From positions 62,001 through 126,000 of the IMG/VR virus record IMGVR_UViG_3300024308_000188: a stretch of DNA of 64,000 nucleotides. One strand, given 5' to 3'. A program made the position numbers and the translations under genes. The notes below the pieces were generated by a model. It searched no databases. It was not told the origin of the DNA and saw only the letters and a list, made by a program, of their open reading frames with translations. Positions 17,235 to 55,522 of the stretch are shown one piece after another (position 1 is the first letter of the stretch; each line of letters opens with the position of its first letter).

Positions 17235-17244
17235 ATTTACAGTT
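17235..17244 (-). promoter_or_regulatory. AACTGTAAAT promoter-like motif upstream of polA
   Basis: About 30 nt before the ATG; the same motif recurs before other replication genes. Confidence 0.7.
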
Positions 17245-17254
17245 TTGTACAAGC

Positions 17255-17286
17255 AAAGAAAAAGGGCAACCGTTAGGCTGCCCTTT
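17255..17286 (-). terminator. Intrinsic terminator
   Basis: AAAGGGCA...TGCCCTTT hairpin plus U-tract on the minus strand. Confidence 0.75.
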
Positions 17287-17290
17287 GAGT

Positions 17291-17875
17291 TTAACGCGGT
17301 CTGTGGTTTTGATTAGGATGCTTGTGATGCCGATTTTGATCACGGTTAGCATTCAGCTGTTCAGCTGTTTTTACCTGTGAATTATCGGTAGCTCCAGCAT
17401 CTTTATTTTGCTCAGGCGGTTGTTCAACATTTTCAGTCACAACCGCTTCAGCAGTTTTAATAACTTCTACTGGTTCAACTTTCTGTCTACGGGGTTCGAC
17501 AGTTTGAGATCTTACCGTATCAGCCATTAATGGATCGTAAGCGGCTTTTATGTTTTGGGTTGGATCAAAAACCTGATCTACTTTAACAAGTTCAGCAGCC
17601 AACTTTTCGTAGTAACCAGTTGGTATATCTACGTGAGTAAGCAATCCACTTTTCGGTTTCGTATAATCAAGCATTATGCCAGAAGGAAGTTTTGAGGTAA
17701 AGTCAAAAGGCATACCATGATTCGGATATGCCGGACTGAATTTACCGCTAACTTCAAAAGCACGTTTGGCGGCAATGGTCTTTTCAGACCAAATGCCGTC
17801 ACACGCTCCGGTATAATACCCAAGAAACTTCAAAATCATTTGCTGACGTTGCAAGCGTTGGATATTGGTTTCCAT
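17291..17875 (-). CDS. Peptidoglycan-binding-domain protein with disordered C-terminus
   Basis: IQRLQRQQMILKFLGYYTGACDGIWSEKTIAAKRAFE is a PG_binding_1-type motif. Confidence 0.75.
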   Translation of the reverse strand: METNIQRLQRQQMILKFLGYYTGACDGIWSEKTIAAKRAFEVSGKFSPAYPNHGMPFDFTSKLPSGIMLDYTKPKSGLLTHVDIPTGYYEKLAAELVKVDQVFDPTQNIKAAYDPLMADTVRSQTVEPRRQKVEPVEVIKTAEAVVTENVEQPPEQNKDAGATDNSQVKTAEQLNANRDQNRHHKHPNQNHRPR

Positions 17876-17884
17876 TTAATTTCC

Positions 17885-20800
17885 TTACATGCGTAAATCA
17901 TCAATTTTTGCAACAAGTTGATCTTGGTTAGTGATAACGTAACCAGCTTCTTTCAACTCTTTAAGTTTGCTCATGAATTCGCGTTTACCAGCTGCGAAAT
18001 AAATGTGCATACCAGGATGAAGCTTCCAAGTTCCACCTACACCGCCACCAGGAATTGCTTTTCCTTCAAGACGTTTCGCAAATGGGTTAGTTGCTTTGTC
18101 CACAACAATACGTAAACGGTCGTGCATCGTTACCGGATACATTTTAACCATTTTAGTATTCTTGCTTTCACGCAAACGCGCACGGAAAAAATCTTGAACA
18201 TCATTCATGATTTTCTTAGCATGACGTTGGTTAAAGAGTTGTTTAGGATCGATCTTCTTGTCACTAAACATATCGTAAACAGCAACCAAACGATTATAAG
18301 TTGGGCCATCAATTTCCAACTGTCCTTTGTCTGATTTTTCTTCAATCCAATTTAAGAAAGCGTAGTACGCAGGGAACGCTTTAAAGTCTACGTATACGAA
18401 ATCTTCAAAGTTTTTGAAGCCAAACTTCAACAAGCCATCTGCATCTGCGTCATTATTTGTAACGTGCATACACAAGAAGCCGTTATAGAAAGAAGGAATT
18501 AATTTAATCTTCTTAGGTTTAATCGCTGGAGCCGCAGGTGCAACAGGACGTTTAGGTGGAACACGACCTGAAAGTGTACCAGCAGGAACTACGCTAACGG
18601 TTGGCCGTACACGCGGAACTTTTGGAACAACTTCTACACCTTGATTTACTGGGCGTTTTTTCTCAATGTTGTCTTTGCGGATATTTGCACGTTCGCGTTC
18701 GCGTGTCTGACGACGAGCATCTTCACGTTCTTGCTTGATGCGTTGTTCCTCAGCCTGTTCTCTCTGAGCGCGAATACGATCAGCTTCTGCCTGTTGTTTA
18801 GCTGCCGCACGTTCCATCTGAAGTTTTTCAGTTTTCGTTCCCCACATTTCTGTAGGTTTAAAGAACTGATCATAAACTTTTCCGGAAACTTTTGTTGCAA
18901 TATAAACCATACTGATAGGCATCAGAACAGGAGGTATATTTTCCAGCATGTTACGTTCATGATATTTAATACGAACACTATGAATCGGTCTGCGTGGATC
19001 AGAAATCATTTCTCCTGGATTATCAGGATCAGGAATTTTCCGAGTACGTTGCAAACCAACAATTGTACCAGTACCAAAACCAGTACGAACTGGACTACCT
19101 TTCAACACTGCTTCTGCATCTTCTAAAATTTCTTCGATGCGCGTTGGAATATATTCTGACAATTTAACCAAACCAAATCCTTCTGGATCAGGAATATTTT
19201 GATTCGGCATTGTTGGAATTTGTGGCATCGTTTTGAAATCTTTTGGAATAGGTGGAATATCAAGATCCAACATTTCCGCACGAGTTGTTTTACGCATTTC
19301 CGTAAATTCGCTTGCTTCGATGTTTGCTAATAAAGCTTTTGCACCAAAGTAATCGTTTACAATACGAGTTTCACCATTTTCCGTTTCTTCTAACGTACCA
19401 CGGTAATCCTCTAATTCACAGCGTTCAAACAACAAATCCAAAGACATCTTGATTGGTTTCAAGACGTATTCGTTTAAAGGTTCATAACGTCTGTTGCCTT
19501 TTTCGTTGAAGCGAATACTGTCAACAGTTTTCCACATCAAACGAGCAACTTTACCAACTTCCAATGTACCGCCAGTCATAATCCAATCGACGTAAATAAC
19601 TTCACGCGCCATATCTCCAGGTTGACCATCAGTAAATTTTGCTGCGGCCGGATCTGGACGGAAAATACGTGCTGTACTTTGTTCGTAATCACCAGGTGAC
19701 CACGGAGTATCAACACGAATAATACGACTTGCCATTTGAAGGTTGTAACCTTCTGTAATAGCTTGCTCGTTAGCTACGAAAATTTCTACATCTTTTGATT
19801 TCATGAAGTCTTGTAAGTTTTGCTTACGTTGATCTTCTGGAATCTGACCGTGGAACATACGCGCTTTGCGTTTATACTCAGGAGGTAACGAATCGAAAAT
19901 ATATTTCGTGTTACCTGTGTAGCGGCAGAAAATAAGTACCTTACCTTTAATCTCCGGTTTCCAGTTATCCAAATCTTGATCTGGTGGCGTAGAAGTTTTC
20001 GGAGTCAATCGACGTTTTATAGTCGGTAATTCGTCTGGCCCAAGTGGAATTGGACGACGCATATACAGTTGACCTTTATATTCAACTATATCGTACTCTT
20101 TCGCTTGCATTTCACGATCCCACTGAATAATACGTCCAGTTTGATCTGCGTTTGCATCATACTTAACACTTTCAAAATGTTCACGTAAGCGTTCTATTAC
20201 CATCGAAACTTTTGATGGAACAAAATCGCCTTGTCTTACACCAGCAATAGCTGCCAACTCTTTGAAGTAAGAATCACCCCAAGGATTTGTAATTAGCTGC
20301 TCAACACGTTGGAAGTATTTTTTGTCGATAGTAGGTAACATAGAAGCATTGATAACACCACTGGCATCAACAACTTTTCCACGACCACCACCGCCACCTT
20401 CTTCGTCATCATTTTCTTCCAATTCATCATCGAAAGAGTTTTCATCATCGTCATCTTCGTCGTCATCTGCTTTGCCGATGTCGCCAGAAAGAATGATAGA
20501 TTTAACTTCGTTGATAACGTGTTCGTAAGCTTCTTGGTGTAACTTGTTACCAAGTTTATTCATTGTTTCGTCTGTAGGATCGAACAAACGAATTTGAATA
20601 AATGTATCAATTGGATTAGGTAACATGAATGCCCACTCTTTACGTTTCAGAGTGATCATGCTGCAATACTTACCAAGTTTGGTACGCATTTTACCTGGAC
20701 CATCTTCAGCAGAAAGATTGATTCCAAGTTTATCCATTTCATCAGGAGTTTTAAGTGCGTAAGCATTCATTAAGGCAGCTTGGCCAATAACATCAGCAAG

Positions 20801-23968: not shown

Positions 23969-24397
23969 CTAAATAAATAAATTCCAAAGAGGATTAGCTG
24001 CAATTTTTTCTTGTGAACAGCGTTGAATCAAAGCTGTAGCATAAAGTTTGGCATCCAAAGAACTTAAAGTGTCCCAAGTTGCCTTGTTATTGTAAATCAA
24101 AAACATATTCTCTGAAGTAAGATTGTCTATCTCTGCCTGAATATGCTCTCGACGTTGAGCAAGTTTGTCATCCTCTTCAGGAGTTTCAAGAACATCACCG
24201 CCCTGAAGATCTTCTGGAAGTTCCTCAGTTTGCGTATAGAAGGCAAGACGTTCTTCAAGCAAAGCAACTTGTCTGCGTAATTCCGCTATAGTTTGCTTGT
24301 CATCATTTGATTCATCTTCTGAAGATCTTGAAAAAATTGCTTTGGGGTAATCTCTTGCCACCAAAGGAAGAACAATGGAAGTGCTTTTCATATTCAA
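23969..24397 (-). CDS. Hypothetical protein (acidic, coiled coil)
   Basis: Operon packing. Confidence 0.6.
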   Translation of the reverse strand: MNMKSTSIVLPLVARDYPKAIFSRSSEDESNDDKQTIAELRRQVALLEERLAFYTQTEELPEDLQGGDVLETPEEDDKLAQRREHIQAEIDNLTSENMFLIYNNKATWDTLSSLDAKLYATALIQRCSQEKIAANPLWNLFI

Positions 24398-25137
24398 TAT
24401 CCCGCGTTAAATGAATTGAGTGATCTTATTAGTAAATTATGGAAAGATTGCTTTGTATATTTTCCCATAGGTAAAACGTAAGGAAAGTCAAAAGATATTT
24501 TTAAACAAAGAATATCTTTGTTCAATCTTTTCAAATGCACCTTAATTCCACTAACATCACCAACAAAAAACCAGCTGTAAATATTTTGCTTTTTAATCGA
24601 ATCTAAAGTGAAGTCTCGGTCAACACTTAAAGGTTTTGGAAAATCTCTGTAAAGAAATCCCTTAAGTGAATGCAAAGCCGCATCCATATTACCTTTTGGA
24701 ATTATCAGATTCTGATAGATGCTTACGTTTGGTAAGGCAGAAGCATGTAGAAAAGAATTGTAATTCAATCCAACATCTATAGATCTAGTGCCTTGGCGAA
24801 AGACTAATAAGTTTTTTCGGCGAAACAATTCATTCAATTTAATATTTACAGTTTTCAACAAAGTTGTTATAAGATTCAAACTAAATTGACTTGCTTCGTA
24901 TTTTTTACCACCAACAAAAGCATTAGTGGTAATATTGTTCAGATAGTTTATGAAAAGAATACTAACTAGAATATCAGCATTGGTTTCATACAAAGTTCTT
25001 ACATCTTTTATGGTTTGAGTATCATTAAATTTTTCCCAAAGAGCGTCACCTTCATGCTGTTTAACCATAGAAGGGTAGGAATCTGATTTGTGCCCTATAC
25101 GCAAACCATGTTTTTTGAGTGTAGAGGCAAAACTCAT
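24394..25137 (-). CDS. Hypothetical protein
   Basis: 247-aa ORF, operon packing. Confidence 0.65.
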   Translation of the reverse strand: MSFASTLKKHGLRIGHKSDSYPSMVKQHEGDALWEKFNDTQTIKDVRTLYETNADILVSILFINYLNNITTNAFVGGKKYEASQFSLNLITTLLKTVNIKLNELFRRKNLLVFRQGTRSIDVGLNYNSFLHASALPNVSIYQNLIIPKGNMDAALHSLKGFLYRDFPKPLSVDRDFTLDSIKKQNIYSWFFVGDVSGIKVHLKRLNKDILCLKISFDFPYVLPMGKYTKQSFHNLLIRSLNSFNAGY

Positions 25138-25140
25138 TGG

Positions 25141-35420: not shown

Positions 35421-35430
35421 ATTTACAGTT
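35421..35430 (-). promoter_or_regulatory. AACTGTAAAT motif
   Basis: Exact motif match; its TAA is the stop codon of the upstream DHH-like gene. Confidence 0.7.
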
Positions 35431-38755: not shown

Positions 38756-38791
38756 TTAACATGCGTGGATCGTCAAACATTGTACTACCTT

Positions 38792-38801
38792 ATTTACAGT
38801 A
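38792..38801 (-). promoter_or_regulatory. TACTGTAAAT motif upstream of the sbcC-like gene
   Basis: 37 nt before the GTG start; overlaps the stop of the upstream gene. Confidence 0.65.
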
Positions 38802-42322: not shown

Positions 42323-42332
42323 ATTTACAGTA
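42323..42332 (-). promoter_or_regulatory. TACTGTAAAT motif upstream of the clamp loader
   Basis: 29 nt before ATG 42294, just downstream of a terminator. Confidence 0.7.
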
Positions 42333-44582: not shown

Positions 44583-45017
44583 CTAAATTTGGTTTTTAAG
44601 AAAAGAGACTTTAATGGACTGTATCTTATCCATCATTTCTTTTGAAACCATAGCAAATTCTGTGTTCAATCCAAAAACATACCAGCCACTATCTTTAATT
44701 GGATGCTCAGTAAATACTACAAATTGAAATTTACCTCGTTTCTCAGAAGCTGTTCTATATTGGAATTTTTTCTTTAGTGGTATTCGTTTGGAATGTGACT
44801 GATTTACGTATTCTATAAAACTATCTTGAACTTGCCTATCAAGATATTTACAGTATAGGTATATCCTATTAGTCAATCCAATGCAAAATAATTCTGGATG
44901 ATCATTAAAAAGTTGGTTGAATTCTTCAAATTCAACACGTTTTTTACCTTTTGGTCTGGCATCATGGACAAGCTTTTGAAGCTCGATTAATTGCTTACAG
45001 GTTTCGTCATTGTACAT
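44583..45017 (-). CDS. Hypothetical protein
   Basis: 144-aa ORF with AAGGA SD. Confidence 0.65.
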   Translation of the reverse strand: MYNDETCKQLIELQKLVHDARPKGKKRVEFEEFNQLFNDHPELFCIGLTNRIYLYCKYLDRQVQDSFIEYVNQSHSKRIPLKKKFQYRTASEKRGKFQFVVFTEHPIKDSGWYVFGLNTEFAMVSKEMMDKIQSIKVSFLKNQI

Positions 45018-45039
45018 AAGTTTTCCTTATTGAAGAAGC

Positions 45040-45660
45040 TGCGAAGGCATGGCTGCGGGTTGTCGGTGTCCGCGAAAGTGGGGGGGGTGGCGCGGCGGAA
45101 CCGGAAAAAGGATCCTGGAAAAGATCAATAACCCAGTTAGTGTGTTAGCTTTTTCTTTTGATTTTAAGGTTGTACGAAGCGGAGCGAAGTACAGCTCTTA
45201 ATCTACGTAGTAGATTTAAGATCTTGATCCAATTTCCCCATGCCCAGATCCCCAACAAACAATTAATAAACAGATCTTTGCTTTTCTACTGATCTCATTT
45301 TCCCCCCCAAAAAAAAAAAAAAAAAAAAAAGATCTGGCCTGTTAATTTGACGAAGGCAAATTTTAGGCAGACCTCCGCCTTTTTATGATCTGTTCCACTG
45401 ATCGCTGTGGGCTAATTCAAATGCCTTGAGATCTTTTTGATCTTTTAATTTATTCTAGTGGCCTGTTGTCTGTTGGGGCATTTAGTAATTTTTAAAGAAT
45501 TTTAGGAATCCATGATTCCAAAGTTGGTGTTCACTTCGCTCACACCAACTATAAACCTTCTTTAATTACTAACTGATCAACTAACGATCCTAAGCAATTA
45601 ACTCATTTCCAAAAGCCCAATTGATCCAGCTGTTTTTATTTAATTTACAGTATTACTTTA
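45040..45660. other. Putative replication-origin-like non-coding region
   Basis: 15 GATC sites in 45111-45626; oriC 13-mer-like words; AT-rich blocks; G8, C7 and A22 tracts; several hairpins; no ORF. Confidence 0.55.
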
Positions 45661-45854
45661 GCAGACCCTACTTTCTGACTACCAGACTTTAGTACACTTA
45701 GAAGCGTTAAAACCCTATTTAGATGCAACGACAAAAAATGGTGTTTTTACCCAAAATAGCTAAAACATAAATTTAGCCTTTTTCTTTAAAATGGGGACAG
45801 AATTTCAGTAAAATACATCAAAAATTGGTAGGAAAATTCACGAATTTTGGACGT

Positions 45855-45883
45855 AAAAAAGGGCAGCTTTTTAAGGCCGCCCT
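45855..45883 (-). terminator. Intrinsic terminator
   Basis: AGGGCGGC...GCTGCCCT plus T6 on the minus strand. Confidence 0.7.
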
Positions 45884-45890
45884 ACAAAAC

Positions 45891-46100
45891 TTATTTAGTG
45901 CTTTCAAATTTAGCGCGAAGTTTAGCACCTACTTGTTTCATTAGTGCCTCTACTTTCTCACCTTCTTCTTTTTCAACAGCAGTCTGAATCTGTTCACCTA
46001 AATCACCGGAAAGAAACGGCATGATTGTACTCAACATAAGACTGCGGCCAGTTTTCTTCTTACCACCTTTCTTTTTACTTACCGAAACAAAGACTTTCAT
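45891..46100 (-). CDS. Small hypothetical protein
   Basis: GAGGT SD, biased codons, followed by a terminator. Confidence 0.65.
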   Translation of the reverse strand: MKVFVSVSKKKGGKKKTGRSLMLSTIMPFLSGDLGEQIQTAVEKEEGEKVEALMKQVGAKLRAKFESTK

Positions 46101-46108: not shown

Positions 46109-47266
46109 TCAATAAAGTTTATAGCTTTTAAAAATGTTGTAAGCAGCTTCAGATCTTTGAACAGCACGAGTAGTTGCCATCCATTCCCAAACCTGACGAT
46201 CTGCCGTTGACTTGCGCGGTACATCATTTACTTTCAAGACTAAATTACGTTCGGGAACAATAATAAAATCTTCTGATCTGAATAAACCTATACGCGCAGG
46301 AAGAACAACAGTAATATCACCTATTGTTATTTCCTGTTCGTAGTTTACCATTTCATTTTCTTGGCTAATATTAGCCTGAATGCTATCCTCACTTAATTTA
46401 AACATTACTATCGCATGAGTAAAATTTGCTACATCACGCACACTTACTTGAATACTTCTTCCGCGATGCTGATCCAAATCGCTATACTTTAAAGGAGTTT
46501 TTGATGTTCCTACGTATAAACGATTATTGGACGGCAACACATCTGTATTAGCACGAACGCTATACGAAGCGCTGATAAAATATTTTGGAACCAGTATTTC
46601 AAAAAGTACATAGCCATCAGATTCTTGTTGAATAAAGTTTACTGGAGTGCTGTTATCAAAAGCGTAACCTTTGATAGCAAGTGCATCATAACTTGTCATC
46701 AATGATTGACGGAAATTCGTGAATTCAAAAGCTGGTTGGCGTCCTTCACGATAACAGATACCACAATCAACACCTGTTCCAGATGTCATAGCATCTTGGA
46801 AGGTAAACACATCATCTGGATTTTCAGCTTTTATTTCCTCATGTTCTTCACGCAACATATCACCAATTTCAACACGTTTGTTATTGAGTGGTTTTGGAGC
46901 ATGACGCTCTACCTCACTTTCTCCAAACAAACTTGATGAACCAAGATCCAAAACCATAGTTGCTTTTTTACCTTCTGGCTGTGAATCTGGAATTGGAGTC
47001 TGCGTGTATTCATCTGACTCTATATCAACCAAACTTGTATCAAGTGCGGCCACACTATCTTCAGCAATATGTTTGCTGCAAGTACAATAACGGCCAGCTC
47101 GAACACGCTTAGCCACAATAGCCACAACTTTATCTACGTTAAGCGCGTTCTCAATTTGATTTTGGAATACAGGCAAAGTTTCATTTAAGCGCTTTTGAGC
47201 GCGTTCATGTGTAAAGTTTTTGGCTCTACGTTTGCCCTTCTTTTGTGCTGTATTAAGCCAACTCAT
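46109..47266 (-). CDS. Hypothetical protein with CxC...CxxC motif, possibly head-completion/neck type
   Basis: RYCTC...DCGICYREG; beta-rich C-terminus. Confidence 0.5.
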   Translation of the reverse strand: MSWLNTAQKKGKRRAKNFTHERAQKRLNETLPVFQNQIENALNVDKVVAIVAKRVRAGRYCTCSKHIAEDSVAALDTSLVDIESDEYTQTPIPDSQPEGKKATMVLDLGSSSLFGESEVERHAPKPLNNKRVEIGDMLREEHEEIKAENPDDVFTFQDAMTSGTGVDCGICYREGRQPAFEFTNFRQSLMTSYDALAIKGYAFDNSTPVNFIQQESDGYVLFEILVPKYFISASYSVRANTDVLPSNNRLYVGTSKTPLKYSDLDQHRGRSIQVSVRDVANFTHAIVMFKLSEDSIQANISQENEMVNYEQEITIGDITVVLPARIGLFRSEDFIIVPERNLVLKVNDVPRKSTADRQVWEWMATTRAVQRSEAAYNIFKSYKLY

Positions 47267-47345: not shown

Positions 47346-47951
47346 ATGCAAAAGCTACGCATTCTATCTTTTGATCCTGGAACATCAAATTTTGCTTATA
47401 GCATACAAGAGTATTCTTACGATGGATCAAAATTAAAGGCAAAGATTTTAGGAACTGGTATGTTTACTAAGTGCGTTACCCAACTTACAGGTAATCACAT
47501 GAATAAACAAATAAGAAAGTTTCAGAAGGCTATGTTAAAGATAAAACGCAAATACAATCCTGATCGAGTTTTCATTGAACGCTTTCAAAGTCGTGGACTT
47601 ACAGGAACAACAATAGAGTGCATTAACATAATGCTTGGACTCATGTTGAACATATTTGCGGATAAGCAGCCAAATATTTACTTGGCCAGTACATGGAAAA
47701 ACAGAATCAATAAAAAGTTGGAAGGTTTATTTGAAAATCCGACATCTAAAAAAGCAAGTCAGTTGGATTTAACTTATAAAGCTTATGGTATGAGTAAAGT
47801 TGCGTCACCTAAAACGCCTCATGAACTAGATGCCACTCTTATTGGTTTCTATTCTGCGACACGTATATTAGGTATGCAGGACTTTGAAAACTTTAATACA
47901 AACAATTGGGAAAAGTTTATTTCTTGGTTTCTAACAACACCCAAACTGTAA
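47346..47951 (+). CDS. RuvC-like Holliday junction resolvase
   Basis: ILSFDPGTSNFAY, VFIERFQ, HELDA: RNase H-fold D/E/D triad. Confidence 0.85.
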   Translation: MQKLRILSFDPGTSNFAYSIQEYSYDGSKLKAKILGTGMFTKCVTQLTGNHMNKQIRKFQKAMLKIKRKYNPDRVFIERFQSRGLTGTTIECINIMLGLMLNIFADKQPNIYLASTWKNRINKKLEGLFENPTSKKASQLDLTYKAYGMSKVASPKTPHELDATLIGFYSATRILGMQDFENFNTNNWEKFISWFLTTPKL

Positions 47952-47953
47952 AT
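47944..47953 (+). promoter_or_regulatory. AACTGTAAAT motif
   Basis: Overlaps the RuvC stop; ~33 nt before ATG 47986. Confidence 0.65.
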
Positions 47954-47973
47954 GCAGTAGTATGTAATAAAAT

Positions 47974-48603
47974 TTGAGAATTAACATGCAACAAAAGATT
48001 GCCGTTTGTCCTTGCAACAAAACTTTTCAATTTACAGGCAAGTGCATTGTTACAACTTGTCAATATCACAATGTTAAAACCAAATCAGGTTGTTTGGAAC
48101 TTGATATTGCGGCCACAAGCACAAAATTAAGTGACACGCAAATTCTACATTTTAAAATTTTACCTAACCAAGATAAGTTTGAATCGAAGTCTTATGATGG
48201 TAAGTTTGCATTCTATGCTCGTAAAAAAGCTGTTGTCGCAGCTAAAGCAAACATGCTTTTATATTTATACTGCGGCTGGATTAAAAGCAAACTCAAACCT
48301 AGTGATAAGTTCAAATATGAATTGGGTATTTCAAATGTATTGGATGAAATGCTGAGAAACTTTCCATTCAATCAACCGGAATTAAATTTTGAACCTTGGA
48401 TGCTTTACTACGCGGCCAACCCAAAAGTTTATCAAAGTTTTATTGATGAACAAAATCGTGGCGGTGAAGAAAGTGTCTTTTTAATAAACGTGTTATGCTT
48501 AACTCCCGGCAAGCATAAAAATTTAGTGTATGCACTTAAAAATTTCAACAACGCGAAAAAGACTTTTGAAAAACAGAAGTCTAAACATGGAGCAATACAA
48601 TGA
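47974..48603 (+). CDS. Hypothetical protein with N-terminal Cys/His cluster
   Basis: CPCN..C...CQYH...GCL; likely start ATG 47986. Confidence 0.6.
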   Translation: MRINMQQKIAVCPCNKTFQFTGKCIVTTCQYHNVKTKSGCLELDIAATSTKLSDTQILHFKILPNQDKFESKSYDGKFAFYARKKAVVAAKANMLLYLYCGWIKSKLKPSDKFKYELGISNVLDEMLRNFPFNQPELNFEPWMLYYAANPKVYQSFIDEQNRGGEESVFLINVLCLTPGKHKNLVYALKNFNNAKKTFEKQKSKHGAIQ

Positions 48604-49247
48604 GTACAAAAGTAAAAACAATTACACTGGCCGCTTGGAATGAAAAGTATGGTTCTAACATTGCTAACGGCATTTATGTTGTTAACAATATGGCTGTACC
48701 TGCCGAAGTTATTTTCAACGTGGTAGGTGCTAACGGTCAACCTTCTGCGGTTAGTGTTCCAAATACTAACGCACCTTTAGATTTGACAGCTATCACAACT
48801 CGTGAAGCTATCTTGAATTCACATGAATTCAAGCGTTTACTGAGTATGCAATATTTGGTTCTGATTGACAACCTTGATGCTGAGCGTATTCTGAGTGAAA
48901 ATTCTGAGTTACGTGAAGCTGCTGCTGTTGCACTGAAAAATAACGGTGGCAAATATGTTGCACGTTCTGTTACCGAAACTTTTGAAATCGGTGGCGCAAA
49001 GGCTCAGCCTTCTGAAAGTCTGCAAGGTAAAATGCAAAGTGCAAACCTTGATATAGAAGATGACGGTGACGATTTAACTGCTGTCGAAGAAATTCTTGGC
49101 GTGTCTGAAGATCCAGAAGCGACTGATGATCAAGTTGTGAAGATTTTCAACAAGTTCTCTTCTCAACTGAACAGTTCTGATTTAGAAGAACTGATGGATA
49201 AAAGCAAAAACAGCAAACTTCAAGATCTGATCGCTGAAAAGATCTAA
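48600..49247 (+). CDS. Hypothetical protein
   Basis: Strongly biased codons; acidic C-terminus; terminator follows. Confidence 0.7.
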   Translation: MSTKVKTITLAAWNEKYGSNIANGIYVVNNMAVPAEVIFNVVGANGQPSAVSVPNTNAPLDLTAITTREAILNSHEFKRLLSMQYLVLIDNLDAERILSENSELREAAAVALKNNGGKYVARSVTETFEIGGAKAQPSESLQGKMQSANLDIEDDGDDLTAVEEILGVSEDPEATDDQVVKIFNKFSSQLNSSDLEELMDKSKNSKLQDLIAEKI

Positions 49248-49258: not shown

Positions 49259-49296
49259 AAAAAAAGGGGAGCCATTAAGGTTCCCCTTTTATTTTT
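49259..49296. terminator. Bidirectional terminator between convergent genes
   Basis: A7-GGGGAGCC...GGTTCCCC-TTTTATTTTT. Confidence 0.8.
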
Positions 49297-50362
49297 GTTC
49301 AATCATTCGTAAATTTTCAGGCTTTATAAATTTCCCACCATATTCCTTTATTTCATCTTTCAAAGCACGTAACATTTTCTTAGGCATTACGTCAGGATCT
49401 AATTTTACAATCTTACCATCCTTTCCTTTCTTACGTGGTAACTTAAATCCTCGATACTCAAAAGAAATCTGCATGTTGTTGCACATCCATTCAAGCTTTT
49501 CTGCCATTGCTTTACCTGCCGCATCATTATCCGGTAGCCAACAAAGTAATTCAATATCAAGCCTTTCTACCAAACGTAATTTCTTTCCATTTATATTTTG
49601 AGAACCTAATACCGCAAGTGCAGGAATACCAGCCATTATTAAACGCAGTGCATCCCTTGGGCCTTCAACCAAAACTACATAACGATATTTCATTTTGGCA
49701 AGCATTGCTTTAACAAAGTTGAAAGGAAATAATCCACTTTCTTTAACCCAATCACCTGCACTACTCACATAACTTAATTTACCTTCTTTCTTTTCTTCAA
49801 GTGCCTCTATTACACCTTTAATTTCTTTACCTACTTTTACAGGCAATATACATTTGAACTCGCTATATTTATTTACGGCAGCAAGTCCATTCAAATTTTT
49901 AATTAGCCATCCCGGATAACCACGCCATTCATTATAAATAGGCCAATCAATTGTTGAAGGATCTCCCAAACTTTTTAACATTCCTTCCATGTCAGTATTT
50001 TTGTTGGTCAGCATTCCTCCTTCCATTTCACGAAGTTTCTTATTCAGGCCGTTCGTGTCAACACTTCCGGTTTTTGGAATAAGATTTGATATTTTCCTTA
50101 ATCCAGCTTTTTCAGCAAACTTGTTCCAATCTCCACTTTCAGGACAACCAAAACAGTTGAATGTTCCCATTGGGTAGCGAGATCCTTCACTTACTACAAC
50201 ACCGCAACTTGGAGTCCTTTCATCGTGAAATGGACAACATACCATTATGCGATCTTGTGTTGTTTTTTGCGGCCCATCTAATTTTTGTAATTCAGTTGTT
50301 ATGATCGACTGCATATCTTCTGCAACAGCCGATGTTTTCTTTGGTGATTTCTTAACCGCCAT
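49289..50362 (-). CDS. DnaG-type DNA primase
   Basis: CHC2 zinc finger CCPFHDERTPSC...FNCFGC; TOPRIM LVEGPRD and PDNDAAG. Confidence 0.9.
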   Translation of the reverse strand: MAVKKSPKKTSAVAEDMQSIITTELQKLDGPQKTTQDRIMVCCPFHDERTPSCGVVVSEGSRYPMGTFNCFGCPESGDWNKFAEKAGLRKISNLIPKTGSVDTNGLNKKLREMEGGMLTNKNTDMEGMLKSLGDPSTIDWPIYNEWRGYPGWLIKNLNGLAAVNKYSEFKCILPVKVGKEIKGVIEALEEKKEGKLSYVSSAGDWVKESGLFPFNFVKAMLAKMKYRYVVLVEGPRDALRLIMAGIPALAVLGSQNINGKKLRLVERLDIELLCWLPDNDAAGKAMAEKLEWMCNNMQISFEYRGFKLPRKKGKDGKIVKLDPDVMPKKMLRALKDEIKEYGGKFIKPENLRMIEQK

Positions 50363-50405
50363 AATATTAACCTTGTACAGTAAGTACCATAATTTCTACT
50401 CATGG

Positions 50406-50415
50406 ATTTACAGTT
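50406..50415 (-). promoter_or_regulatory. AACTGTAAAT motif upstream of primase
   Basis: 44 nt before the ATG. Confidence 0.7.
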
Positions 50416-50439
50416 TAGTACAGGTCAAGGAACCAACGT

Positions 50440-50742
50440 ATGATGAACGTAACTAAAGGCAGAGTTCTGTGTTATAGTCCAGAAATGCTTGAACTAAGAG
50501 ATTTATTAAGATCTTATTTTTCTGAAGATCGATTGCAAATTTGTGGTGAAACGAATAATGTAAATGCTTTCTATATACACATAGAAAGCTGCAATATCCA
50601 AAAGCTTGCATCTAAACTTGCGCTGCAAGGACACAAGATGGAACCTAGTGATCTTGCTGGCATCTATTGCCTTCAACTTAAATCTGGCGCTAAATTCCAC
50701 GTTATTGTGTCTGAGAAATTTAGTGTCTTGGTAACATTATGA
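50440..50742 (+). CDS. Hypothetical protein
   Basis: 100-aa ORF, AAGGA SD. Confidence 0.6.
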   Translation: MMNVTKGRVLCYSPEMLELRDLLRSYFSEDRLQICGETNNVNAFYIHIESCNIQKLASKLALQGHKMEPSDLAGIYCLQLKSGAKFHVIVSEKFSVLVTL

Positions 50743-51881
50743 GTTTTTCTTCGCTGGCAACTACTCACCATTATAAAGGCAAGTCATCCAATTCTGGTGA
50801 AGAATCTACGCCATACTCTTTAGATTTTCAAAAAACTAATCCAAATCGTTTAAGTCCGATCAGTAAACTTGTTGCCCAAGCAATGGAAGCAAGTGTTGTT
50901 CTTCCTCGTGGCCGTGCTCCACAATTCAGACCTAGTAGCTTTCCATGTTGCTCAATTTTAAATTGGATGCAACTTCTGCGCTTTAAAAAGCTAGGCAACA
51001 ATGAAGAACACAAATACTTTGGTATGCAATACTATACCGGAGTCGGCACAACAGTTCACGAAAAAATCCAATACTTTGCTGGATTCACTGGTAAATTTTG
51101 GGGTAACTGGAAATGTATAAATCCAGTTTGTAAAGAAAGTAAGAAAGCTAGAAATCTTTACGATCATTTGGGTAATATTGTTAAAGAAGGAAAGCCAACA
51201 AGAACGCATACAACTAAAAGCACTTGCCCTAAATGCCATGAACCTATGGATTACGTAGAGTTCGCAATAAAATATCGTGGTATCGATGGTCACATTGATG
51301 CGATCATAAAGTTGGATAACGGTGAATGGTGGGTAATGGATTACAAAACCACCAGCATGAAAAAAGTTGTTGCCTACAAATTTCCAGAGAAAAAACATTT
51401 GCATCAACTTCCGTTTTATGTTTATGCACTTGAAAAGAAATATGCTAAAAAGTTTGGCATGAAATTAAAAGGCTTCTCACTTATTTATATTCCACGAGAT
51501 AATCCTCGTGCCTTTGTTGAGTATAAAGAAAGGTGGACAGATAAATGGCGTGTTCGTTGCCATAATCAATTTGAAGCAGAATATGAAAAATGGGAAGCAA
51601 TCAACAGCGATGTCGAAACCGAAACTTTTGATGAAGTCATTAGAACCAAGCCTTGCAAGAGTCAATCCGAATATCGTAGTTTAATGCACGTATACGAAGA
51701 TTGTCCATTGCTGAGTATTTGCTTTACTCAGAAAAAGCTTCGCAATTTCTTAGATACTTGGGTTGAATATCATTCTGACGATCCAAAACGTCTAATACCT
51801 TTTAAGCAGGTAATTGAAATTGTAACTGACTTGGAATACAAAAGTAAAAAGACACCAACAGTTAAACGAATTCGTTTATAA
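50739..51881 (+). CDS. Cas4-like PD-(D/E)XK exonuclease (stand-alone)
   Basis: FPCC, GTTVHE, GHIDA, MDYKT, QLPFY and C-terminal C...C..C for an Fe-S cluster. Confidence 0.8.
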   Translation: MSFSSLATTHHYKGKSSNSGEESTPYSLDFQKTNPNRLSPISKLVAQAMEASVVLPRGRAPQFRPSSFPCCSILNWMQLLRFKKLGNNEEHKYFGMQYYTGVGTTVHEKIQYFAGFTGKFWGNWKCINPVCKESKKARNLYDHLGNIVKEGKPTRTHTTKSTCPKCHEPMDYVEFAIKYRGIDGHIDAIIKLDNGEWWVMDYKTTSMKKVVAYKFPEKKHLHQLPFYVYALEKKYAKKFGMKLKGFSLIYIPRDNPRAFVEYKERWTDKWRVRCHNQFEAEYEKWEAINSDVETETFDEVIRTKPCKSQSEYRSLMHVYEDCPLLSICFTQKKLRNFLDTWVEYHSDDPKRLIPFKQVIEIVTDLEYKSKKTPTVKRIRL

Positions 51882-51890
51882 GATTTAAAA

Positions 51891-52235
51891 ATGGCTAAAC
51901 CGCATCTGCATGACGACAATGTTAAAGTTTTAGCAAAATACAAGAATCTGCTTGGCTATGAGCTTATAGAAGATCTTGAATTTGCAAGTCCTTTGATTAC
52001 AAACCTTGCTGTTAATACTTATTTATTAAAAATAAATGTTCAGCTTCTTGATGAAGAACTAAGTCGTGAACGACAACTAGCTTTCAATCTTAACAAAGCT
52101 TTAAAGTTGTCTAATCGCCAATCATCTGTTGTTCAAAAACTTCGCACTAGAATAACACAGTGCAAAAAGGATTTACGTACAAGACGAATAATCGTCAACC
52201 GTATTGTTAAAGAACTAAAAGGTATTTTACGATGA
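51891..52235 (+). CDS. Hypothetical coiled-coil protein
   Basis: 114-aa ORF. Confidence 0.6.
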   Translation: MAKPHLHDDNVKVLAKYKNLLGYELIEDLEFASPLITNLAVNTYLLKINVQLLDEELSRERQLAFNLNKALKLSNRQSSVVQKLRTRITQCKKDLRTRRIIVNRIVKELKGILR

Positions 52236-52738
52236 AGCGTGTAACAATTCATTTGCCTGATTTTTCTTCTGAATCTAAGTCGCGGGGCGATCAAGCTTAT
52301 CTTCGCTTGGCCGAACAAGGCACAAGTCAATTAGATATTGATGGGAGAGAAGAACTTCGTAAACTTGAAAGAAAGAGATCAAAGAAACGCTTGCAACAAC
52401 TAAATGAAGATATTGAGTTGGAAATTCTTGAAGATCAGGTTGCGGCCAACAAAGTCACTACTAAAAAAGAAAAGACTGAAGCAACTGTTGCTGCTTGGGC
52501 TTTACGACAGACTGGCGATAAAAATCCGAAACCTACAAAGTTTCCTAAAAAAGAAGAAAAAGAATCTGAGGAGAAATCTGAAGAAGATTCTGAGGAGAAA
52601 TCTGAAGAAGATTCTGACGTTGATTCAGCATTAACTGAAGAATTGGAAACCGAAGAAAACACTGAAGAGTCGGAAGAACCAAAAGAAGGAGAAGAACAAG
52701 ATGAAAGTTCTGATACAGATGCCTTCGAGGAAGTCTGA
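52232..52738 (+). CDS. Low-complexity protein with acidic tail
   Basis: E/S/K-rich; 24-nt tandem duplication (SEEKSEED x2). Confidence 0.6.
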   Translation: MKRVTIHLPDFSSESKSRGDQAYLRLAEQGTSQLDIDGREELRKLERKRSKKRLQQLNEDIELEILEDQVAANKVTTKKEKTEATVAAWALRQTGDKNPKPTKFPKKEEKESEEKSEEDSEEKSEEDSDVDSALTEELETEENTEESEEPKEGEEQDESSDTDAFEEV

Positions 52739-53411
52739 TGTGGCTTACAAACCTATAAAATCTAGTGTGCGAAAAGTAAAATCTGTTGCTAGAAGAATGC
52801 ACGAAGAAAGACAACGTAAAATCAAAGAGTTCCAATCTCACAGTGCTAATAAAACAGCACAAAAGAAACTTACTTCAGCTGACAAAGCTAAAACAAAAAG
52901 AATTGAACTTAAAGATCGAGTTGTCCGTGTTGTTCCATTAAAGCAAAATGCTGGCATTGTTCAACAATTACCTGACACAGTTCTTACACGTAAAGGCAAA
53001 AGCTTGAAAGAATTGTTGCGCGGTACTCCCCCACTTTTCAAGCATAACGCCAAGCACGTTATTATAAGCAAATTGGTTCGTAAGAAAACTAAAAGTGGAT
53101 TACCTGCTGTTGAAGCAGTTGCCTATTCCGTAGATCCTTATCGTCCGAATAAAACAAGAAGAGATCACAAGCTTTATATAATTGGACTTGATAGTCAAAC
53201 AGATCCGATTAATAAACAGCGTCGAGTTCTTGTAAGTTGTCCGTGCGAAAACTATGTTTTTACTTGGGAATACGCAAACGCTTTACATGGCGCAAGTAAA
53301 TTGGTTTATGGTAATGGTGATCCACCGACTTTTACCAATCCTGGAAATGCAGTTGGTTTATGCAAACACTGTGTTGCGTTGGCCGAAGAATTAGTTAAGA
53401 AAAATTGGTAG
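52701..53411 (+). CDS. SWIM zinc-finger protein with basic N-terminus
   Basis: VSCPCENY...GLCKHCVAL (CxC...CxH); true start probably 52719 or 52740. Confidence 0.7.
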   Translation: MKVLIQMPSRKSDVAYKPIKSSVRKVKSVARRMHEERQRKIKEFQSHSANKTAQKKLTSADKAKTKRIELKDRVVRVVPLKQNAGIVQQLPDTVLTRKGKSLKELLRGTPPLFKHNAKHVIISKLVRKKTKSGLPAVEAVAYSVDPYRPNKTRRDHKLYIIGLDSQTDPINKQRRVLVSCPCENYVFTWEYANALHGASKLVYGNGDPPTFTNPGNAVGLCKHCVALAEELVKKNW

Positions 53412-53421
53412 GTGACATAAA

Positions 53422-53703
53422 ATGGCTTGTTCAGGTTGCGCTAGACGTAGGGCAGCAATTAAATCTTTTGCAATAAACATTACAGACAAAATAGCTAGTG
53501 GTGCAAAAAAGTTGGTTACTTCTATTGGTAGTGATTCTACTGCACAAGCTAAACCCTTAACTGGGCCGACAGGTCAATCAGCTTGTGTTAATTGCACTAC
53601 ATCAGTTACGGCAGATGGTTGGATCAATAAATGCACAATATGCGGAGCAGTTAGCGAAGCGAAACCAATACCTCACAAATTAAAACCAAAATGTGATTGC
53701 TAG
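53422..53703 (+). CDS. Small Cys-rich zinc-binding protein
   Basis: CSGC, CVNC, CTIC, CDC. Confidence 0.6.
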   Translation: MACSGCARRRAAIKSFAINITDKIASGAKKLVTSIGSDSTAQAKPLTGPTGQSACVNCTTSVTADGWINKCTICGAVSEAKPIPHKLKPKCDC

Positions 53704-54401
53704 GAGAAATACAAGTGGAAGAAACTAAAGGCGTGACACAAGAAATGAAATTGATCTCTGATCTTTCAGGTCAAGTGAGCAAATTGGAAACTCTTGTTAA
53801 TGATAAAAATGTCATTATTCAAAAACAAAGTAATGACCTTGCTATCAGTGGCAACAAAGTTTCGGTTCTACAAGAAATGTTATTCGCGGCAAACAATCGA
53901 TTAGTTGAAGAACTTACAATTCTTAAAACAACGCAACAACTTGCAATGAGTCTTACTGAACGAGTAAAAACTTTAGAATATGAGGCTAAGGTCAATGCAG
54001 AACAAAGCAAAAAAGATCTTGAACTTGCGCGAAGTCAAGCCAACGTAAGTTCACAGCAAGTTGTGCAAAGAGCTGAGCGTCAACGCGAAAGTGATGCGAT
54101 TAACGATTGGGTGTGCAATTTCTTTACCTCTTGTTTTACTGATGTTGATGCAACCAAACGTATTCGTGAATATGCGAATGGTAAGCGAACTTTGTGCTGG
54201 TTATTAAGCACGTTCTTTCTTTCTACCGATGAAACATTCAAAAGTTGCGGTATAAAAGAATCCGCTGAAAACTATGACAAGTCGCAAAAAGAATCTTTGA
54301 ATAATGCAGATACACGCATGTATATTTTGCGTACACACATTACATTGTACGCAAAGAAAGCACGACTGCTTATTCCAGCCAAGTCAGAAAGTAATCAATA
54401 G
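53697..54401 (+). CDS. Hypothetical coiled-coil protein
   Basis: Heptad-rich N-terminal half. Confidence 0.65.
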   Translation: MLGEIQVEETKGVTQEMKLISDLSGQVSKLETLVNDKNVIIQKQSNDLAISGNKVSVLQEMLFAANNRLVEELTILKTTQQLAMSLTERVKTLEYEAKVNAEQSKKDLELARSQANVSSQQVVQRAERQRESDAINDWVCNFFTSCFTDVDATKRIREYANGKRTLCWLLSTFFLSTDETFKSCGIKESAENYDKSQKESLNNADTRMYILRTHITLYAKKARLLIPAKSESNQ

Positions 54402-54408
54402 CAATGTT

Positions 54409-54440
54409 AAAGGCGGCCCTAAAAAGCTGCCTTTTTTATT
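54409..54440 (+). terminator. Intrinsic terminator
   Basis: AAGGCGGC...GCTGCCTT followed by TTTT. Confidence 0.8.
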
Positions 54441-54456
54441 GCCTCTGCTTTTGTAA

Positions 54457-54466
54457 AACTGTAAAT
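54457..54466 (+). promoter_or_regulatory. AACTGTAAAT motif upstream of the sigma gene
   Basis: 35 nt before the GTG start, right after a terminator. Confidence 0.7.
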
Positions 54467-54500
54467 ACTAGGGTAAGGGCTTAATGTTAAAGGATTCTAT

Positions 54501-55520
54501 GTGAGTAAAGAAAATTTAACAGGCGGTCAAATACAAGAAATAATGGACACGCTTTTATATAAAGCACTTGAACCAATAGTGATCCATACAAATGTCTTTG
54601 ACAGTCAACTTATCTATTTACTAACCGCTGTTATAAAAAACAAAAAACGAAAGTTTTGTGCTCTTGAAAGATCTCAGACCATAGACATTTTGGCACAAGC
54701 CATAGTTTGTCCTGACCGCATTCGTAAGTTCGAGCTGATCAAAAAACTTAAGATCGAAAGATCTTTTGTTCATGTTTTCATAAAGAAATTTTTAGCAGAA
54801 TACAAAGACGTATATATGGAACTTTATTTCCATTATATGAGCGAACCGAAGCGAAGAAATTTTTATCGGGATCGGATGGTTCCGTACAAAGCTCTTTTAG
54901 GTGCAGATAGTATACAAGATGTTTTTGTGGCTATCACCCAACCTTCTGAGTATCTGGCCTTATTCTACAAATATTTCAACAGTGTTGTTGAGCAGTATCA
55001 TAAGTTTTGTTATACACATGCAAAACATTTGATTGATACAAACACTGGAAATAACTACGACTACAAAGATGTGGTGCAAAACTTTTTGCGTAATGTTGTG
55101 GTAGCACTAAACAAATATGACAGCAGCAAAGGCGCTTTAACGTCATATATAAAGTATTGGATTCTCAACAGTCTTACTTGTGCAAGTTCTGAACATGAAT
55201 ATGGAATAGCTTATGTTATCCCACAGAACCACAAGAAAACTTTGAGTGGTGGTCATAGTTCAAATGTAAACTTTTCAACTTCAATGGACACCTTACTTTC
55301 TCAGGGTGAAGATGAAGATGGAAATTTACATGAATTACTTACGGCAGAAACAGAAGATCTTTCTGATGAACATGCTGTCGATCATGAACTAAGGCGATTA
55401 TATCTCATGGCAAAAAGAGCAGATCCTTTTGGATTGGCCAGACTTACGCTTGAGATACCAGAGGTATTTACTGAGGCAGAGCTAGAGTTAATGGAACGGC
55501 ATACTCTGTCTAAACTGTAA
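54501..55520 (+). CDS. Phage RNA polymerase sigma factor (sigma70 family, region 2)
   Basis: DVVQNFLRNVVVALNKYDSSKGALTSYIKYWI parallels region 2.2-2.3 (DLIQ..N.GL..A..KFD..KG..FSTYA.WWI). Confidence 0.7.
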   Translation: MSKENLTGGQIQEIMDTLLYKALEPIVIHTNVFDSQLIYLLTAVIKNKKRKFCALERSQTIDILAQAIVCPDRIRKFELIKKLKIERSFVHVFIKKFLAEYKDVYMELYFHYMSEPKRRNFYRDRMVPYKALLGADSIQDVFVAITQPSEYLALFYKYFNSVVEQYHKFCYTHAKHLIDTNTGNNYDYKDVVQNFLRNVVVALNKYDSSKGALTSYIKYWILNSLTCASSEHEYGIAYVIPQNHKKTLSGGHSSNVNFSTSMDTLLSQGEDEDGNLHELLTAETEDLSDEHAVDHELRRLYLMAKRADPFGLARLTLEIPEVFTEAELELMERHTLSKL

Positions 55521-55522
55521 AT
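55513..55522 (+). promoter_or_regulatory. AACTGTAAAT motif upstream of SSB
   Basis: 39 nt before the ATG; overlaps the sigma gene stop. Confidence 0.7.

What the first reader, a model, noticed from the sequence alone, without database searches (positions are those of the whole stretch)
17235..55522. A WACTGTAAAT promoter-like motif defines a replication regulon
Seen: exact ACTGTAAAT in the sense orientation about 25-45 nt upstream of polA (17235), 34589-35395 (35421), sbcC (38792), clamp loader (42323), 47974 (47944), primase (50406), sigma (54457) and SSB (55513). Further copies lie at 24844, 44846, 45643 and 61471. Roughly 1-2 would be expected by chance in 64 kb at this composition. No accompanying TTGACA -35 is seen. 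Inference: the recognition element of a phage sigma factor or activator; the sigma gene carries one itself, suggesting autoregulation.
Basis: partly seen in the sequence, partly recalled or inferred. Interest (0 to 1): 0.7.

Follow-up and report, generated by a model that had tools for sequence, protein, structure and literature searches.

The report
Conserved jumbo-phage promoter motif CTGTAAAT
The repeated ACTGTAAAT is very probably a phage-specific promoter, shared by a wide clade of giant phages that carry their own RpoD-like sigma factor; a relative's database record already labels it a putative promoter, so it is real but not new.

Summary
The window holds 12 exact ACTGTAAAT against 1.2 expected, and the 214.5-kb contig holds 20, all in the sense orientation of the local genes. 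Eight window copies lie 25-43 nt upstream of start codons. Three follow intrinsic-terminator-like hairpins. Four supply the TAA stop codon of the preceding gene.

The contig is about two thirds of a roughly 320-kb jumbo phage with no RNA polymerase of its own. It encodes a sigma-70-like protein (54501-55520, phrog_17569).

The core CTGTAAAT or xGTAAATA is among the most enriched upstream words in all eight relatives tested and is the top word in five. These relatives infect Erwinia, Pseudomonas, Xanthomonas and Vibrio. The motif sits before orthologous primase, sigma and SSB genes.

The Lu11 GenBank record already annotates CTGTAAAT-N5-GTA as "putative middle/late promoter".

My best reading is a -10-type promoter without a -35 element, like T4 late TATAAATA, read by host core polymerase with the phage sigma. 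Transcription probably starts at the conserved G about 7 nt downstream. No TSS data exist.

"Replication regulon" is too narrow: the portal and endonuclease VII genes carry the motif too. A second motif, TAATTT(A), drives the tail sheath genes and some genes inside the replication module.

Sigma autoregulation is plausible but untested. A cascade is the main rival: the sigma as a middle gene that reads TAATTT.

The parts
17235..17243 (-). ACTGTAAAT promoter-like site, 29 nt upstream of the polA N-terminal part (15223-17205). A terminator-like hairpin with T-run lies just upstream. Predicted start G at 17228.
24844..24852 (-). Intragenic sense copy inside 24394-25137. No GTA downstream. CTGTAAA is kept at nearly the same position in the 48%-identical G001 orthologue. 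It may be an internal promoter or a constraint of the coding sequence (K-T-V-N).
35421..35429 (-). Promoter-like site 25 nt upstream of 34589-35395 (phrog_18876, function unknown). Its TAA is the stop codon of the DHH phosphoesterase gene 35423-36325.
38792..38800 (-). Promoter-like site 36 nt upstream of the SbcC-like gene (36335-38755, GTG start). Its TAA is the stop codon of the phosphoesterase gene 38794-39333. Predicted start G at 38785.
42323..42331 (-). Promoter-like site 28 nt upstream of the clamp-loader ATG at 42294, after a T-run. Predicted start G at 42316.
44846..44854 (-). Intragenic sense copy inside 44583-45017. Function unknown.
45643..45651 (-). Copy in the 875-bp non-coding gap 45017-45891. 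It points into a stretch rich in GATC sites, a T22-G7 tract and a C-rich tract. The next ORF is about 625 nt away.
47945..47953 (+). Promoter-like site 32 nt upstream of 47986-48603 (phrog_19006, function unknown). Its TAA is the stop codon of 47346-47951. Predicted start G at 47960.
50406..50414 (-). Promoter-like site 43 nt upstream of the primase gene (49289-50362). Primase is a lone minus-strand gene bounded by the bidirectional terminator 49262-49290. The site is conserved upstream of primase in G001 and in Erwinia phage Y3. Predicted start G at 50399.
54409..54434 (+). Intrinsic-terminator-like hairpin with T-run directly upstream of the sigma promoter site.
54458..54466 (+). Promoter-like site 34 nt upstream of the sigma gene. 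Predicted start G at 54473. Conserved in G001 and in Y3-like phages.
54501..55520 (+). Sigma-70-family protein, 339 aa, phrog_17569. It is the candidate reader of the motif.
   Evidence: Pfam Sigma70_r2 scores 27.6 bits against a cut-off of 24. The family profile matches RpoD regions 1.2-2.4. The AlphaFold model (pLDDT 81.6) matches E. coli sigma-70 chains. The equivalents of Y430, W433 and W434 are conserved.
55514..55522 (+). Promoter-like site 38 nt upstream of the SSB gene (55561-56592). Its TAA is the sigma stop codon. The same arrangement recurs in several distant lineages.
61472..61480 (+). Intragenic sense copy inside 61211-61552, 224 nt upstream of 61705-62127.

Best explanation
ACTGTAAAT is the core of a phage-specific promoter of the "-10 only" type. 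It has no -35 element.

Inferred mechanism:
- Host core RNA polymerase is re-targeted by the phage's own sigma-70-like protein (54501-55520) and opens DNA at this element.
- Transcription starts about 7 nt downstream, at the G of a weakly conserved GTA.
- This gives leaders of about 20-35 nt that contain the Shine-Dalgarno sequence.

Genes served: polA, clamp loader, primase, SSB, SbcC and the sigma gene itself, and outside the window the portal and endonuclease VII genes. It is therefore a general middle or middle/late class, not a replication-only regulon.

Shown: enrichment, strand specificity, position, and conservation at orthologous genes across a broad phage clade. The genomes checked have this sigma; the RNA polymerase beta family PF00562 was sought in three of them and not found.

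For: 1. Enrichment. The window has 12 copies against 1.18 expected. For the 8-mer CTGTAAAT, the near-identical complete genome G002 has 52 against 8 in the backwards-read control, G001 has 50 against 13, and Y3 has 41 against 7. For the 9-mer ACTGTAAAT, Lu11 has 36 against 0.
2. Strand and position. All 20 exact copies are sense. Eleven are intergenic, and 10 of those lie 25-97 nt upstream of a same-strand gene.
3. Context. Three window sites follow terminator-like hairpins. The lone minus-strand primase gene, bounded by a bidirectional terminator, has this element upstream in three lineages.
4. Unbiased 7-mer enrichment upstream of genes puts CTGTAAA/TGTAAAT or a GTAAAT variant among the most enriched words in the contig and all eight relatives. 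It is the top word in Y3, Xhv12, GR11A and Peetri.
5. The only transcription component shared by all of these genomes is the sigma phrog_17569. PF00562 (RNA polymerase beta) and the gp55-type sigma families were sought in G002, G001 and Y3 and not found.
6. The second motif, TAATTT(A), is not enriched in Xhv12, Peetri or GR11A, which still have the sigma and the GTAAAT motif.
7. The sigma keeps the -10-melting residues Y, W, W and has a sigma-70-like fold.
8. G-T-A is over-represented 6-9 nt downstream of the motif in most lineages. The shortest motif-to-start-codon spacings (15-16 nt) fit a -10 position and do not fit a -35 or -24 position.
9. The Lu11 record annotates the same 16-mer as "putative middle/late promoter".
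Against: - There are no transcription start data. The wastewater "RNA-Seq" contigs were inconclusive, and no infection RNA-seq was found for the contig or Lu11.
- The sigma-motif link rests on co-occurrence only. The complex prediction was not run by the tool.
- The sigma gene sits behind the motif and behind a terminator. If the sigma is required for the motif, its first expression needs another route: basal host recognition, read-through or an injected protein.
- The motif does not fit the sigma-70 -10 consensus cleanly. With the last T at -7, position -11 would be T.
- Three or four copies are intragenic or far from any gene.
Confidence: 0.6

Rival explanations
1. Cascade model. CTGTAAAT is a middle promoter read by host RNA polymerase, either host sigma-70 helped by an early phage protein or another phage factor. 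The 54501-55520 sigma is a middle gene product that instead reads the second conserved motif, TAATTT(A), which precedes the tail sheath genes.
For: - In known cascades such as SPO1 and T4, the sigma gene for a class is expressed from the preceding class. That is established knowledge, not tested here.
- Here the sigma gene lies behind CTGTAAAT and a terminator in G000, G001 and Y3.
- TAATTT fits the sigma-70-type -10 pattern TAnnnT better than GTAAAT does.
- TAATTTA precedes both tail sheath genes.
- G000 and G002 carry an extra early-region sigma of 226 aa.
Against: - TAATTT(A) is not enriched in Xhv12, Peetri or GR11A, which keep the sigma and the GTAAAT motif.
- The extra 226-aa sigma is absent from G001 and Y3, which keep CTGTAAAT.
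- TAATTT also drives non-structural genes inside the replication module, so it is not a clean late class.
- No candidate early activator was identified.
Confidence: 0.25
2. The motif acts at the RNA level, as a processing site or a binding site for a translational regulator in polycistronic mRNA, and not as a promoter.
For: It is sense-strand specific, lies 25-45 nt upstream of start codons, and often overlaps the preceding stop codon.
Against: - Sites sit directly after intrinsic-terminator-like hairpins, where little RNA would pass.
- The isolated, oppositely oriented primase gene needs its own promoter, and this is the only conserved element there.
- The AT-rich 8-mer resembles -10 elements and the T4 late promoter.
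Confidence: 0.05
3. A DNA-level signal unrelated to transcription (replication, packaging, or a restriction or methylation site), or a compositional or coding artefact.
For: One copy points into a putative origin or terminus-like non-coding region. Some copies are intragenic.
Against: - The motif is oriented strictly with the genes.
- Most copies cluster just upstream of start codons.
- It is conserved at orthologous intergenic positions despite 20-45% protein identity and genome GC from 35 to 56%.
- It is not palindromic.
Confidence: 0.03

Closest known systems
"Putative middle/late promoter" features of Pseudomonas phage Lu11 (GenBank JQ768459.1)
   Same: - The same sequence: CTGTAAAT followed after 5-6 nt by GTA, preceded by A-rich bases.
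- The same position, for example upstream of the SSB homologue.
- The same gene order sigma-SSB-RecA, with a sigma 42% identical.
   Different: Lu11 is a 51% GC phage of Pseudomonas putida. Its record annotates only some copies; the one before primase, for example, is not annotated. No experimental support or reader protein is given in the record, and the genome announcement could not be read.
T4 late promoter TATAAATA, read by gp55 with gp33 and the gp45 clamp
   Same: A single 8-bp AT-rich -10-type element without a -35 element. TGTAAATA differs from it by one base. Applying the T4 geometry puts the start on the conserved G (inference from established T4 knowledge).
   Different: No gp55-type sigma was detected in three genomes tested. 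The candidate reader is a 339-aa RpoD-like sigma. The genes served include replication genes, which in T4 are early or middle.
Phage-encoded sigma cascades of Bacillus phage SPO1 (gp28, gp33/34)
   Same: The phage relies on host core polymerase and re-targets it with its own sigma-70-family protein to phage-specific promoter classes.
   Different: SPO1 promoters are bipartite, with -35 and -10 elements. No -35 element is conserved here. The order of events here is unknown.
Extended -10 promoters of bacterial sigma-70 (TGnTATAAT)
   Same: A TG dinucleotide lies just upstream of an AT-rich element, and no -35 is needed.
   Different: The TG abuts TAAAT without the spacer base, and the consensus T at -7 or A at -11 cannot both be met. 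The site therefore looks poor for host sigma-70 (inference).

Membership tests
Lu11-type putative middle/late promoter of sigma-encoding jumbo phages | Sequence CTGTAAAT followed after 5-6 nt by GTA | tested here: met
   Lu11 features read CTGTAAATACATAGTA, CTGTAAATACAGTGTA and CTGTAAATGGTGAGTA. The window sites are ACTGTAAAT-N6-GTA in most gene-proximal copies.
Lu11-type putative middle/late promoter of sigma-encoding jumbo phages | Lies upstream of orthologous genes in a phage of the same clade | tested here: met
   It lies upstream of SSB in Lu11 and in the window. It lies upstream of primase, sigma and SSB in Y3, in G001 and in the window. The order sigma-SSB-RecA is conserved.
Bacterial-type promoter read by a sigma-70-family factor | Sense orientation at a short, bounded distance upstream of genes, including after terminators | tested here: met
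Bacterial-type promoter read by a sigma-70-family factor | Transcription starts at a fixed distance downstream | not testable with these tools
   No infection RNA data were found. The metagenomic RNA-Seq contigs were inconclusive.
Bacterial-type promoter read by a sigma-70-family factor | A cognate sigma is present and binds the element | tested here: inconclusive
   The sigma is present and co-occurs with the motif in the contig and all eight relatives. Binding was not tested, because the complex job was not folded.
T4-type late promoter system (gp55/gp33/gp45) | Consensus TATAAATA | tested here: not met
   The consensus here is (C/T)TGTAAAT(A/C).
T4-type late promoter system (gp55/gp33/gp45) | A gp55-type minimal sigma is encoded | tested here: not met
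   phrog_234 and phrog_12791 were searched in G002, G001 and Y3 and gave no match at E <= 1.
Sigma-70 family (for the protein 54501-55520) | Region 2 with the -10-melting aromatic residues | tested here: met
   Pfam Sigma70_r2 scores 27.6 bits against a cut-off of 24. The profile aligns to RpoD, with Y216, W219 and W220 matching Y430, W433 and W434. The best fold matches are E. coli sigma-70 chains.
Sigma-70 family (for the protein 54501-55520) | Region 4 helix-turn-helix for -35 binding | tested here: inconclusive
   There is no Pfam region 4 hit. The model has a confident C-terminal bundle of three helices (287-338) after a disordered 227-286 linker. No -35 element is conserved.
Extended -10 sigma-70 promoter | TG at -15/-14, one base before a TATAAT-like hexamer | tested here: not met
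   The TG directly abuts TAAAT, and no register satisfies both A at -11 and T at -7.

The most novel reading that the evidence does not exclude
An entire, widely distributed clade of RNA-polymerase-less jumbo phages uses one ancient promoter of the "-10 only" type, xGTAAATA. The clade's hosts include Erwinia, Dickeya, Pseudomonas, Xanthomonas and Vibrio, and it is also found in subsurface and wastewater samples. The promoter is read by a divergent RpoD-like sigma that sits behind its own promoter in a positive feedback loop. That would be a T4-late-like promoter architecture run by a full-length sigma-70 relative rather than by gp55. A second, clade-restricted motif, TAATTT, is read by a factor not yet identified. 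One copy of the promoter fires into a putative replication origin.
Probability: 0.45. Interest if true: 0.5.

Novelty: new member of a known kind. Interest (0 to 1): 0.38.

Why it matters
It gives a concrete, testable transcription map for a large, mostly uncultured group of giant phages that depend on the host polymerase. The map has a host-type early class, a CTGTAAAT class and a TAATTT class. It defines likely operon starts in the replication module, helps annotate start codons, and supplies ready-made templates to test what the clade's sigma factor recognises. The family-wide conservation goes beyond what the single Lu11 annotation shows. Phage-specific promoters for phage sigmas are nevertheless expected biology.

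Tried and rejected
- Direct phmmer of the sigma against PDB sequences found nothing meaningful. The profile and fold searches were needed.
It is not evidence either way.
- I laid four wastewater "RNA-Seq" runs on 50001-56000. The contigs are fragmentary strain variants. Depth is highest over the SSB gene, and two contigs begin near 55496-55521, but there is no usable start-site signal. A gap at about 54330-54770 in all four runs is unexplained.
- No infection RNA-seq was found for the contig or for Lu11.
- The downstream GTAnnn could be the real -10, with CTGTAAAT as an upstream activator box in the manner of MotA or a -24 element. I rejected this. It would put starts inside or after the Shine-Dalgarno sequence at the closely spaced sites.
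- I looked for a second conserved sigma or a gp55 homologue to explain TAATTT. Searches of G002, G001 and Y3 found none, and the neighbours of sigma/UvsX have no sigma-like Pfam hits.
- Literature searches for the motif string and for promoters of Y3, Lu11 and PaBG found no published description. The Lu11 announcement is not held.
Full report
**1. Observation**

Dinucleotide-preserving shuffles give a mean of 1.18 and a maximum of 4 in 100.

The window is bases 62001-126000 of a single 214,526-bp contig with 37.9% GC. The contig holds 20 exact copies. Every one is in the sense orientation of the local genes: 11 are intergenic and 9 lie inside a same-strand gene. None is antisense. Copies with one mismatch are a chance-like mix of sense and antisense.

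Eight window copies lie 25-43 nt upstream of start codons that have Shine-Dalgarno sequences. Their genes are:
- the polA N-terminal part
- 34589-35395
- an SbcC-like gene
- the clamp loader
- 47986-48603
- primase
- sigma
- SSB

Pfam and PHROG hits confirm the gene labels.

Three sites (17235, 42323, 54458) follow terminator-like hairpins with T-runs. At four sites (35421, 38792, 47945, 55514) the TAA inside the motif is the stop codon of the preceding gene. In six of the eight gene-proximal sites the seventh base after the motif is G, within a GTA.

**2. What the genome is**

The contig comes from a subsurface metagenome, and related strains occur in wastewater runs. It aligns at 97-99% identity to about two thirds of a 319,518-bp IMG/VR genome, G002, which is classed as complete with terminal repeats.

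It carries the features of the Lu11/PaBG/Y3 group of jumbo myoviruses:
- two tail sheath genes, a terminase and a portal gene
- two PolA-like ORFs, a clamp loader, a primase, SSB and a UvsX/RecA-like recombinase

The PaBG paper describes the two-sheath feature for this group (PMC7412058).

The RNA polymerase beta family PF00562 was sought in G002, G001 and Erwinia phage Y3 and not found, although the same search found it in all 14 control genomes. The phage must therefore use the host core enzyme. Published overviews of such phages say the same (PMC7824862; PMC13282480).

**3. The sigma**

The 339-aa product of 54501-55520 passes the Pfam Sigma70_r2 threshold and belongs to phrog_17569, "RNA polymerase sigma factor". 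It has at least 248 homologues in metagenomes and 88 in sequenced phages.

A profile of 40 homologues aligns to regions 1.2-2.4 of RpoD. The equivalents of E. coli Y430, W433 and W434 are kept, while Q437 is an invariant Asn.

The AlphaFold model has mean pLDDT 81.6. It shows:
- a helical N-terminal part and a sigma-2-like domain
- a disordered 227-286 linker
- a small C-terminal helical bundle

Its best PDB matches are all E. coli sigma-70 chains. Region 4 is not detectable by sequence.

G000 and G002 also carry a 226-aa sigma just outside the window, in the region served by host-type promoters. It is absent from G001 and Y3. No gp55-type sigma was found.

**4. Conservation**

In Erwinia phage Y3, whose sigma is 45% identical, CTGTAAAT(A) lies upstream of the orthologous primase and sigma genes, and a close variant (CTGTAAAC) lies upstream of SSB. 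A 286.6-kb IMG/VR relative, G001 (sigma 70% identical), has it upstream of all three.

Whole-genome counts:

| Genome | Motif counted | Observed | Backwards-read control |
|---|---|---|---|
| G002 | CTGTAAAT | 52 | 8 |
| G001 | CTGTAAAT | 50 | 13 |
| Y3 | CTGTAAAT | 41 | 7 |
| Lu11 | ACTGTAAAT | 36 | 0 |

An unbiased search for 7-mers enriched 8-80 nt upstream of genes returned this motif among the top words in the contig and in all eight relatives. I downloaded each relative whole and used my own simple gene calls. The lineage variants are:
- aaaCTGTAAAT in G000, G002, G001 and Lu11
- atCTGTAAATa in Y3
- AAACTGTrAA in PaBG
- tCCTGTAAATA in Xanthomonas phage PhiXhv-12 (sigma 28% identical)
- tcTTGTAAATAa in Vibrio phage GR11A (21%)
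- cgGGTAAATa in Pseudomonas phage Peetri (24%)

No position around -35 carries information. G-T-A is over-represented 6-9 nt after the motif in most lineages.

Among 55 distinct IMG/VR loci that encode the sigma, GTAAA[TA] lies within 110 nt upstream of the sigma gene in 25. It lies at the sigma-SSB junction in 22, often with the motif's TAA serving as the sigma stop codon.

**5. Prior knowledge**

The GenBank record of Pseudomonas phage Lu11 (JQ768459.1) carries "regulatory: promoter, putative middle/late promoter" features. The three I read are CTGTAAAT followed after five bases by GTA, and one lies upstream of the SSB homologue. The element is thus already annotated in a relative, with no reader protein or experimental evidence given in the record.

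I found no paper in the held library that describes it. The Lu11 announcement is not held.

**6. Other promoter classes and the "regulon" claim**

The same enrichment analysis gives a second motif, TAATTT(A). It is shared by G000, G002, G001, Y3, Lu11 and PaBG but not enriched in PhiXhv-12, Peetri or GR11A.

TAATTT(A) precedes both tail sheath genes and an ATPase gene. Within the window it also precedes:
- 46109-47266
- 31023-31793
- 29487-30905
- the peptidase gene 43310-44539
- 47346-47951
- the exonuclease operon that starts at 50440

Host-type promoters of the form GTGTCAAAAA ... TGGTATAAT occur outside the window at G000 129-162 kb.

A TCTGTAAAT copy precedes the portal gene, and another CTGTAAAT copy lies upstream of an endonuclease VII gene. 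The motif therefore marks a general phage-specific promoter class that includes most replication genes.

**7. Mechanism**

The motif most likely occupies the -10 position. The shortest spacings to a start codon are 15-16 nt, and the Shine-Dalgarno sequences lie more than 10 nt downstream. Placing the -10 at the downstream GTAnnn would put starts inside or after the ribosome-binding site.

TGTAAATA differs by one base from the T4 late promoter TATAAATA. The T4 geometry puts the start on the conserved G. This step is inference from established T4 knowledge.

The assignment to the phage sigma rests on co-occurrence. The sigma is the only transcription protein shared by all genomes that have the motif, and the alternative motif is missing in three of them.

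The main rival is a cascade in which this sigma, a gene behind CTGTAAAT and a terminator, reads TAATTT instead. If the sigma does read its own promoter, its first expression needs basal host recognition, read-through or an injected protein. None of these was testable here.

An RNA-level role is unlikely. The sites follow terminators, and the isolated primase gene needs a promoter of its own.

**8. Verdict**

The element is a conserved phage promoter core. "Replication regulon" is too narrow. The element is a new member of a kind already annotated in Lu11. Interest is moderate.

Noticed in passing
window 6382, 24433, 31816, 47298 (- strand), plus TAATTT upstream of 29487-30905, 43310-44539, 47346-47951 (+) and 50440-50742 (+); also G000 16043-38785: A second conserved promoter-like motif, (a)TAATTT(A), lies 22-51 nt upstream of the two tail sheath genes, an ATPase gene, a peptidase gene and the exonuclease operon. 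It is enriched upstream of genes in G000, G002, G001, Y3, Lu11 and PaBG but not in PhiXhv-12, Peetri or GR11A. No reader protein was identified.
   Followed up: partly
window 45017-45891: The largest non-coding gap in the window. Read on the minus strand it holds a terminator, an ACTGTAAAT pointing inward, many GATC sites, a T22-G7 homopolymer tract (about 45300-45335) and a C-rich tract. The contig ends of the near-identical complete genome G002 (126-bp overlap) map to about 45310-45435. No tRNA or Rfam hit was found. It may be a replication origin or a genome-end region.
   Followed up: partly
G000 132307-132987 (window coordinates 70307-70987, outside the window): A second sigma of 226 aa (Sigma70_r2 48 bits, phrog_351), 2.8 kb downstream of the host-type promoter at G000 129495. 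It is present only in G000 and G002, not in G001 or Y3.
   Followed up: partly
G000 129495, 136930, 141496, 161758 (outside the window): Near-identical host-type promoters of about 50 nt, GTGTCAAAAA ... TTTTGGTATAAT, with an extended -10. They probably form the early class.
   Followed up: no
window 13613-14839 and 15223-17205: DNA polymerase A lies in two ORFs. One holds the exonuclease and the start of the polymerase domain; the other holds the C-terminal polymerase part (phrog_17). A 383-nt gap separates them. It may be a split gene or an intervening element.
   Followed up: no
window 56674-59556: The UvsX/RecA-like recombinase is 960 aa. It has an endonuclease-like segment (phrog_4645) inserted at about residues 461-655, probably an intein or a homing-endonuclease insertion.
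   Followed up: no
window 49262-49290: A strong bidirectional terminator (12-bp stem flanked by an A-run and a T-run) lies between the convergent 48600-49247 and primase genes.
   Followed up: no
window 62525-62599: tRNA-Gly (anticodon TCC) on the + strand.
   Followed up: no
window 54330-54770: All four wastewater "RNA-Seq" runs lack contigs over the terminator, the promoter and the first roughly 270 nt of the sigma gene, while the flanks are covered. The cause is unknown; divergence, filtering or low depth are possible.
   Followed up: no
whole contig: The 214.5-kb contig is only about two thirds of the genome. The near-identical IMG/VR genome is 319.5 kb, and about 105 kb of it is missing from the contig.
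   Followed up: yes
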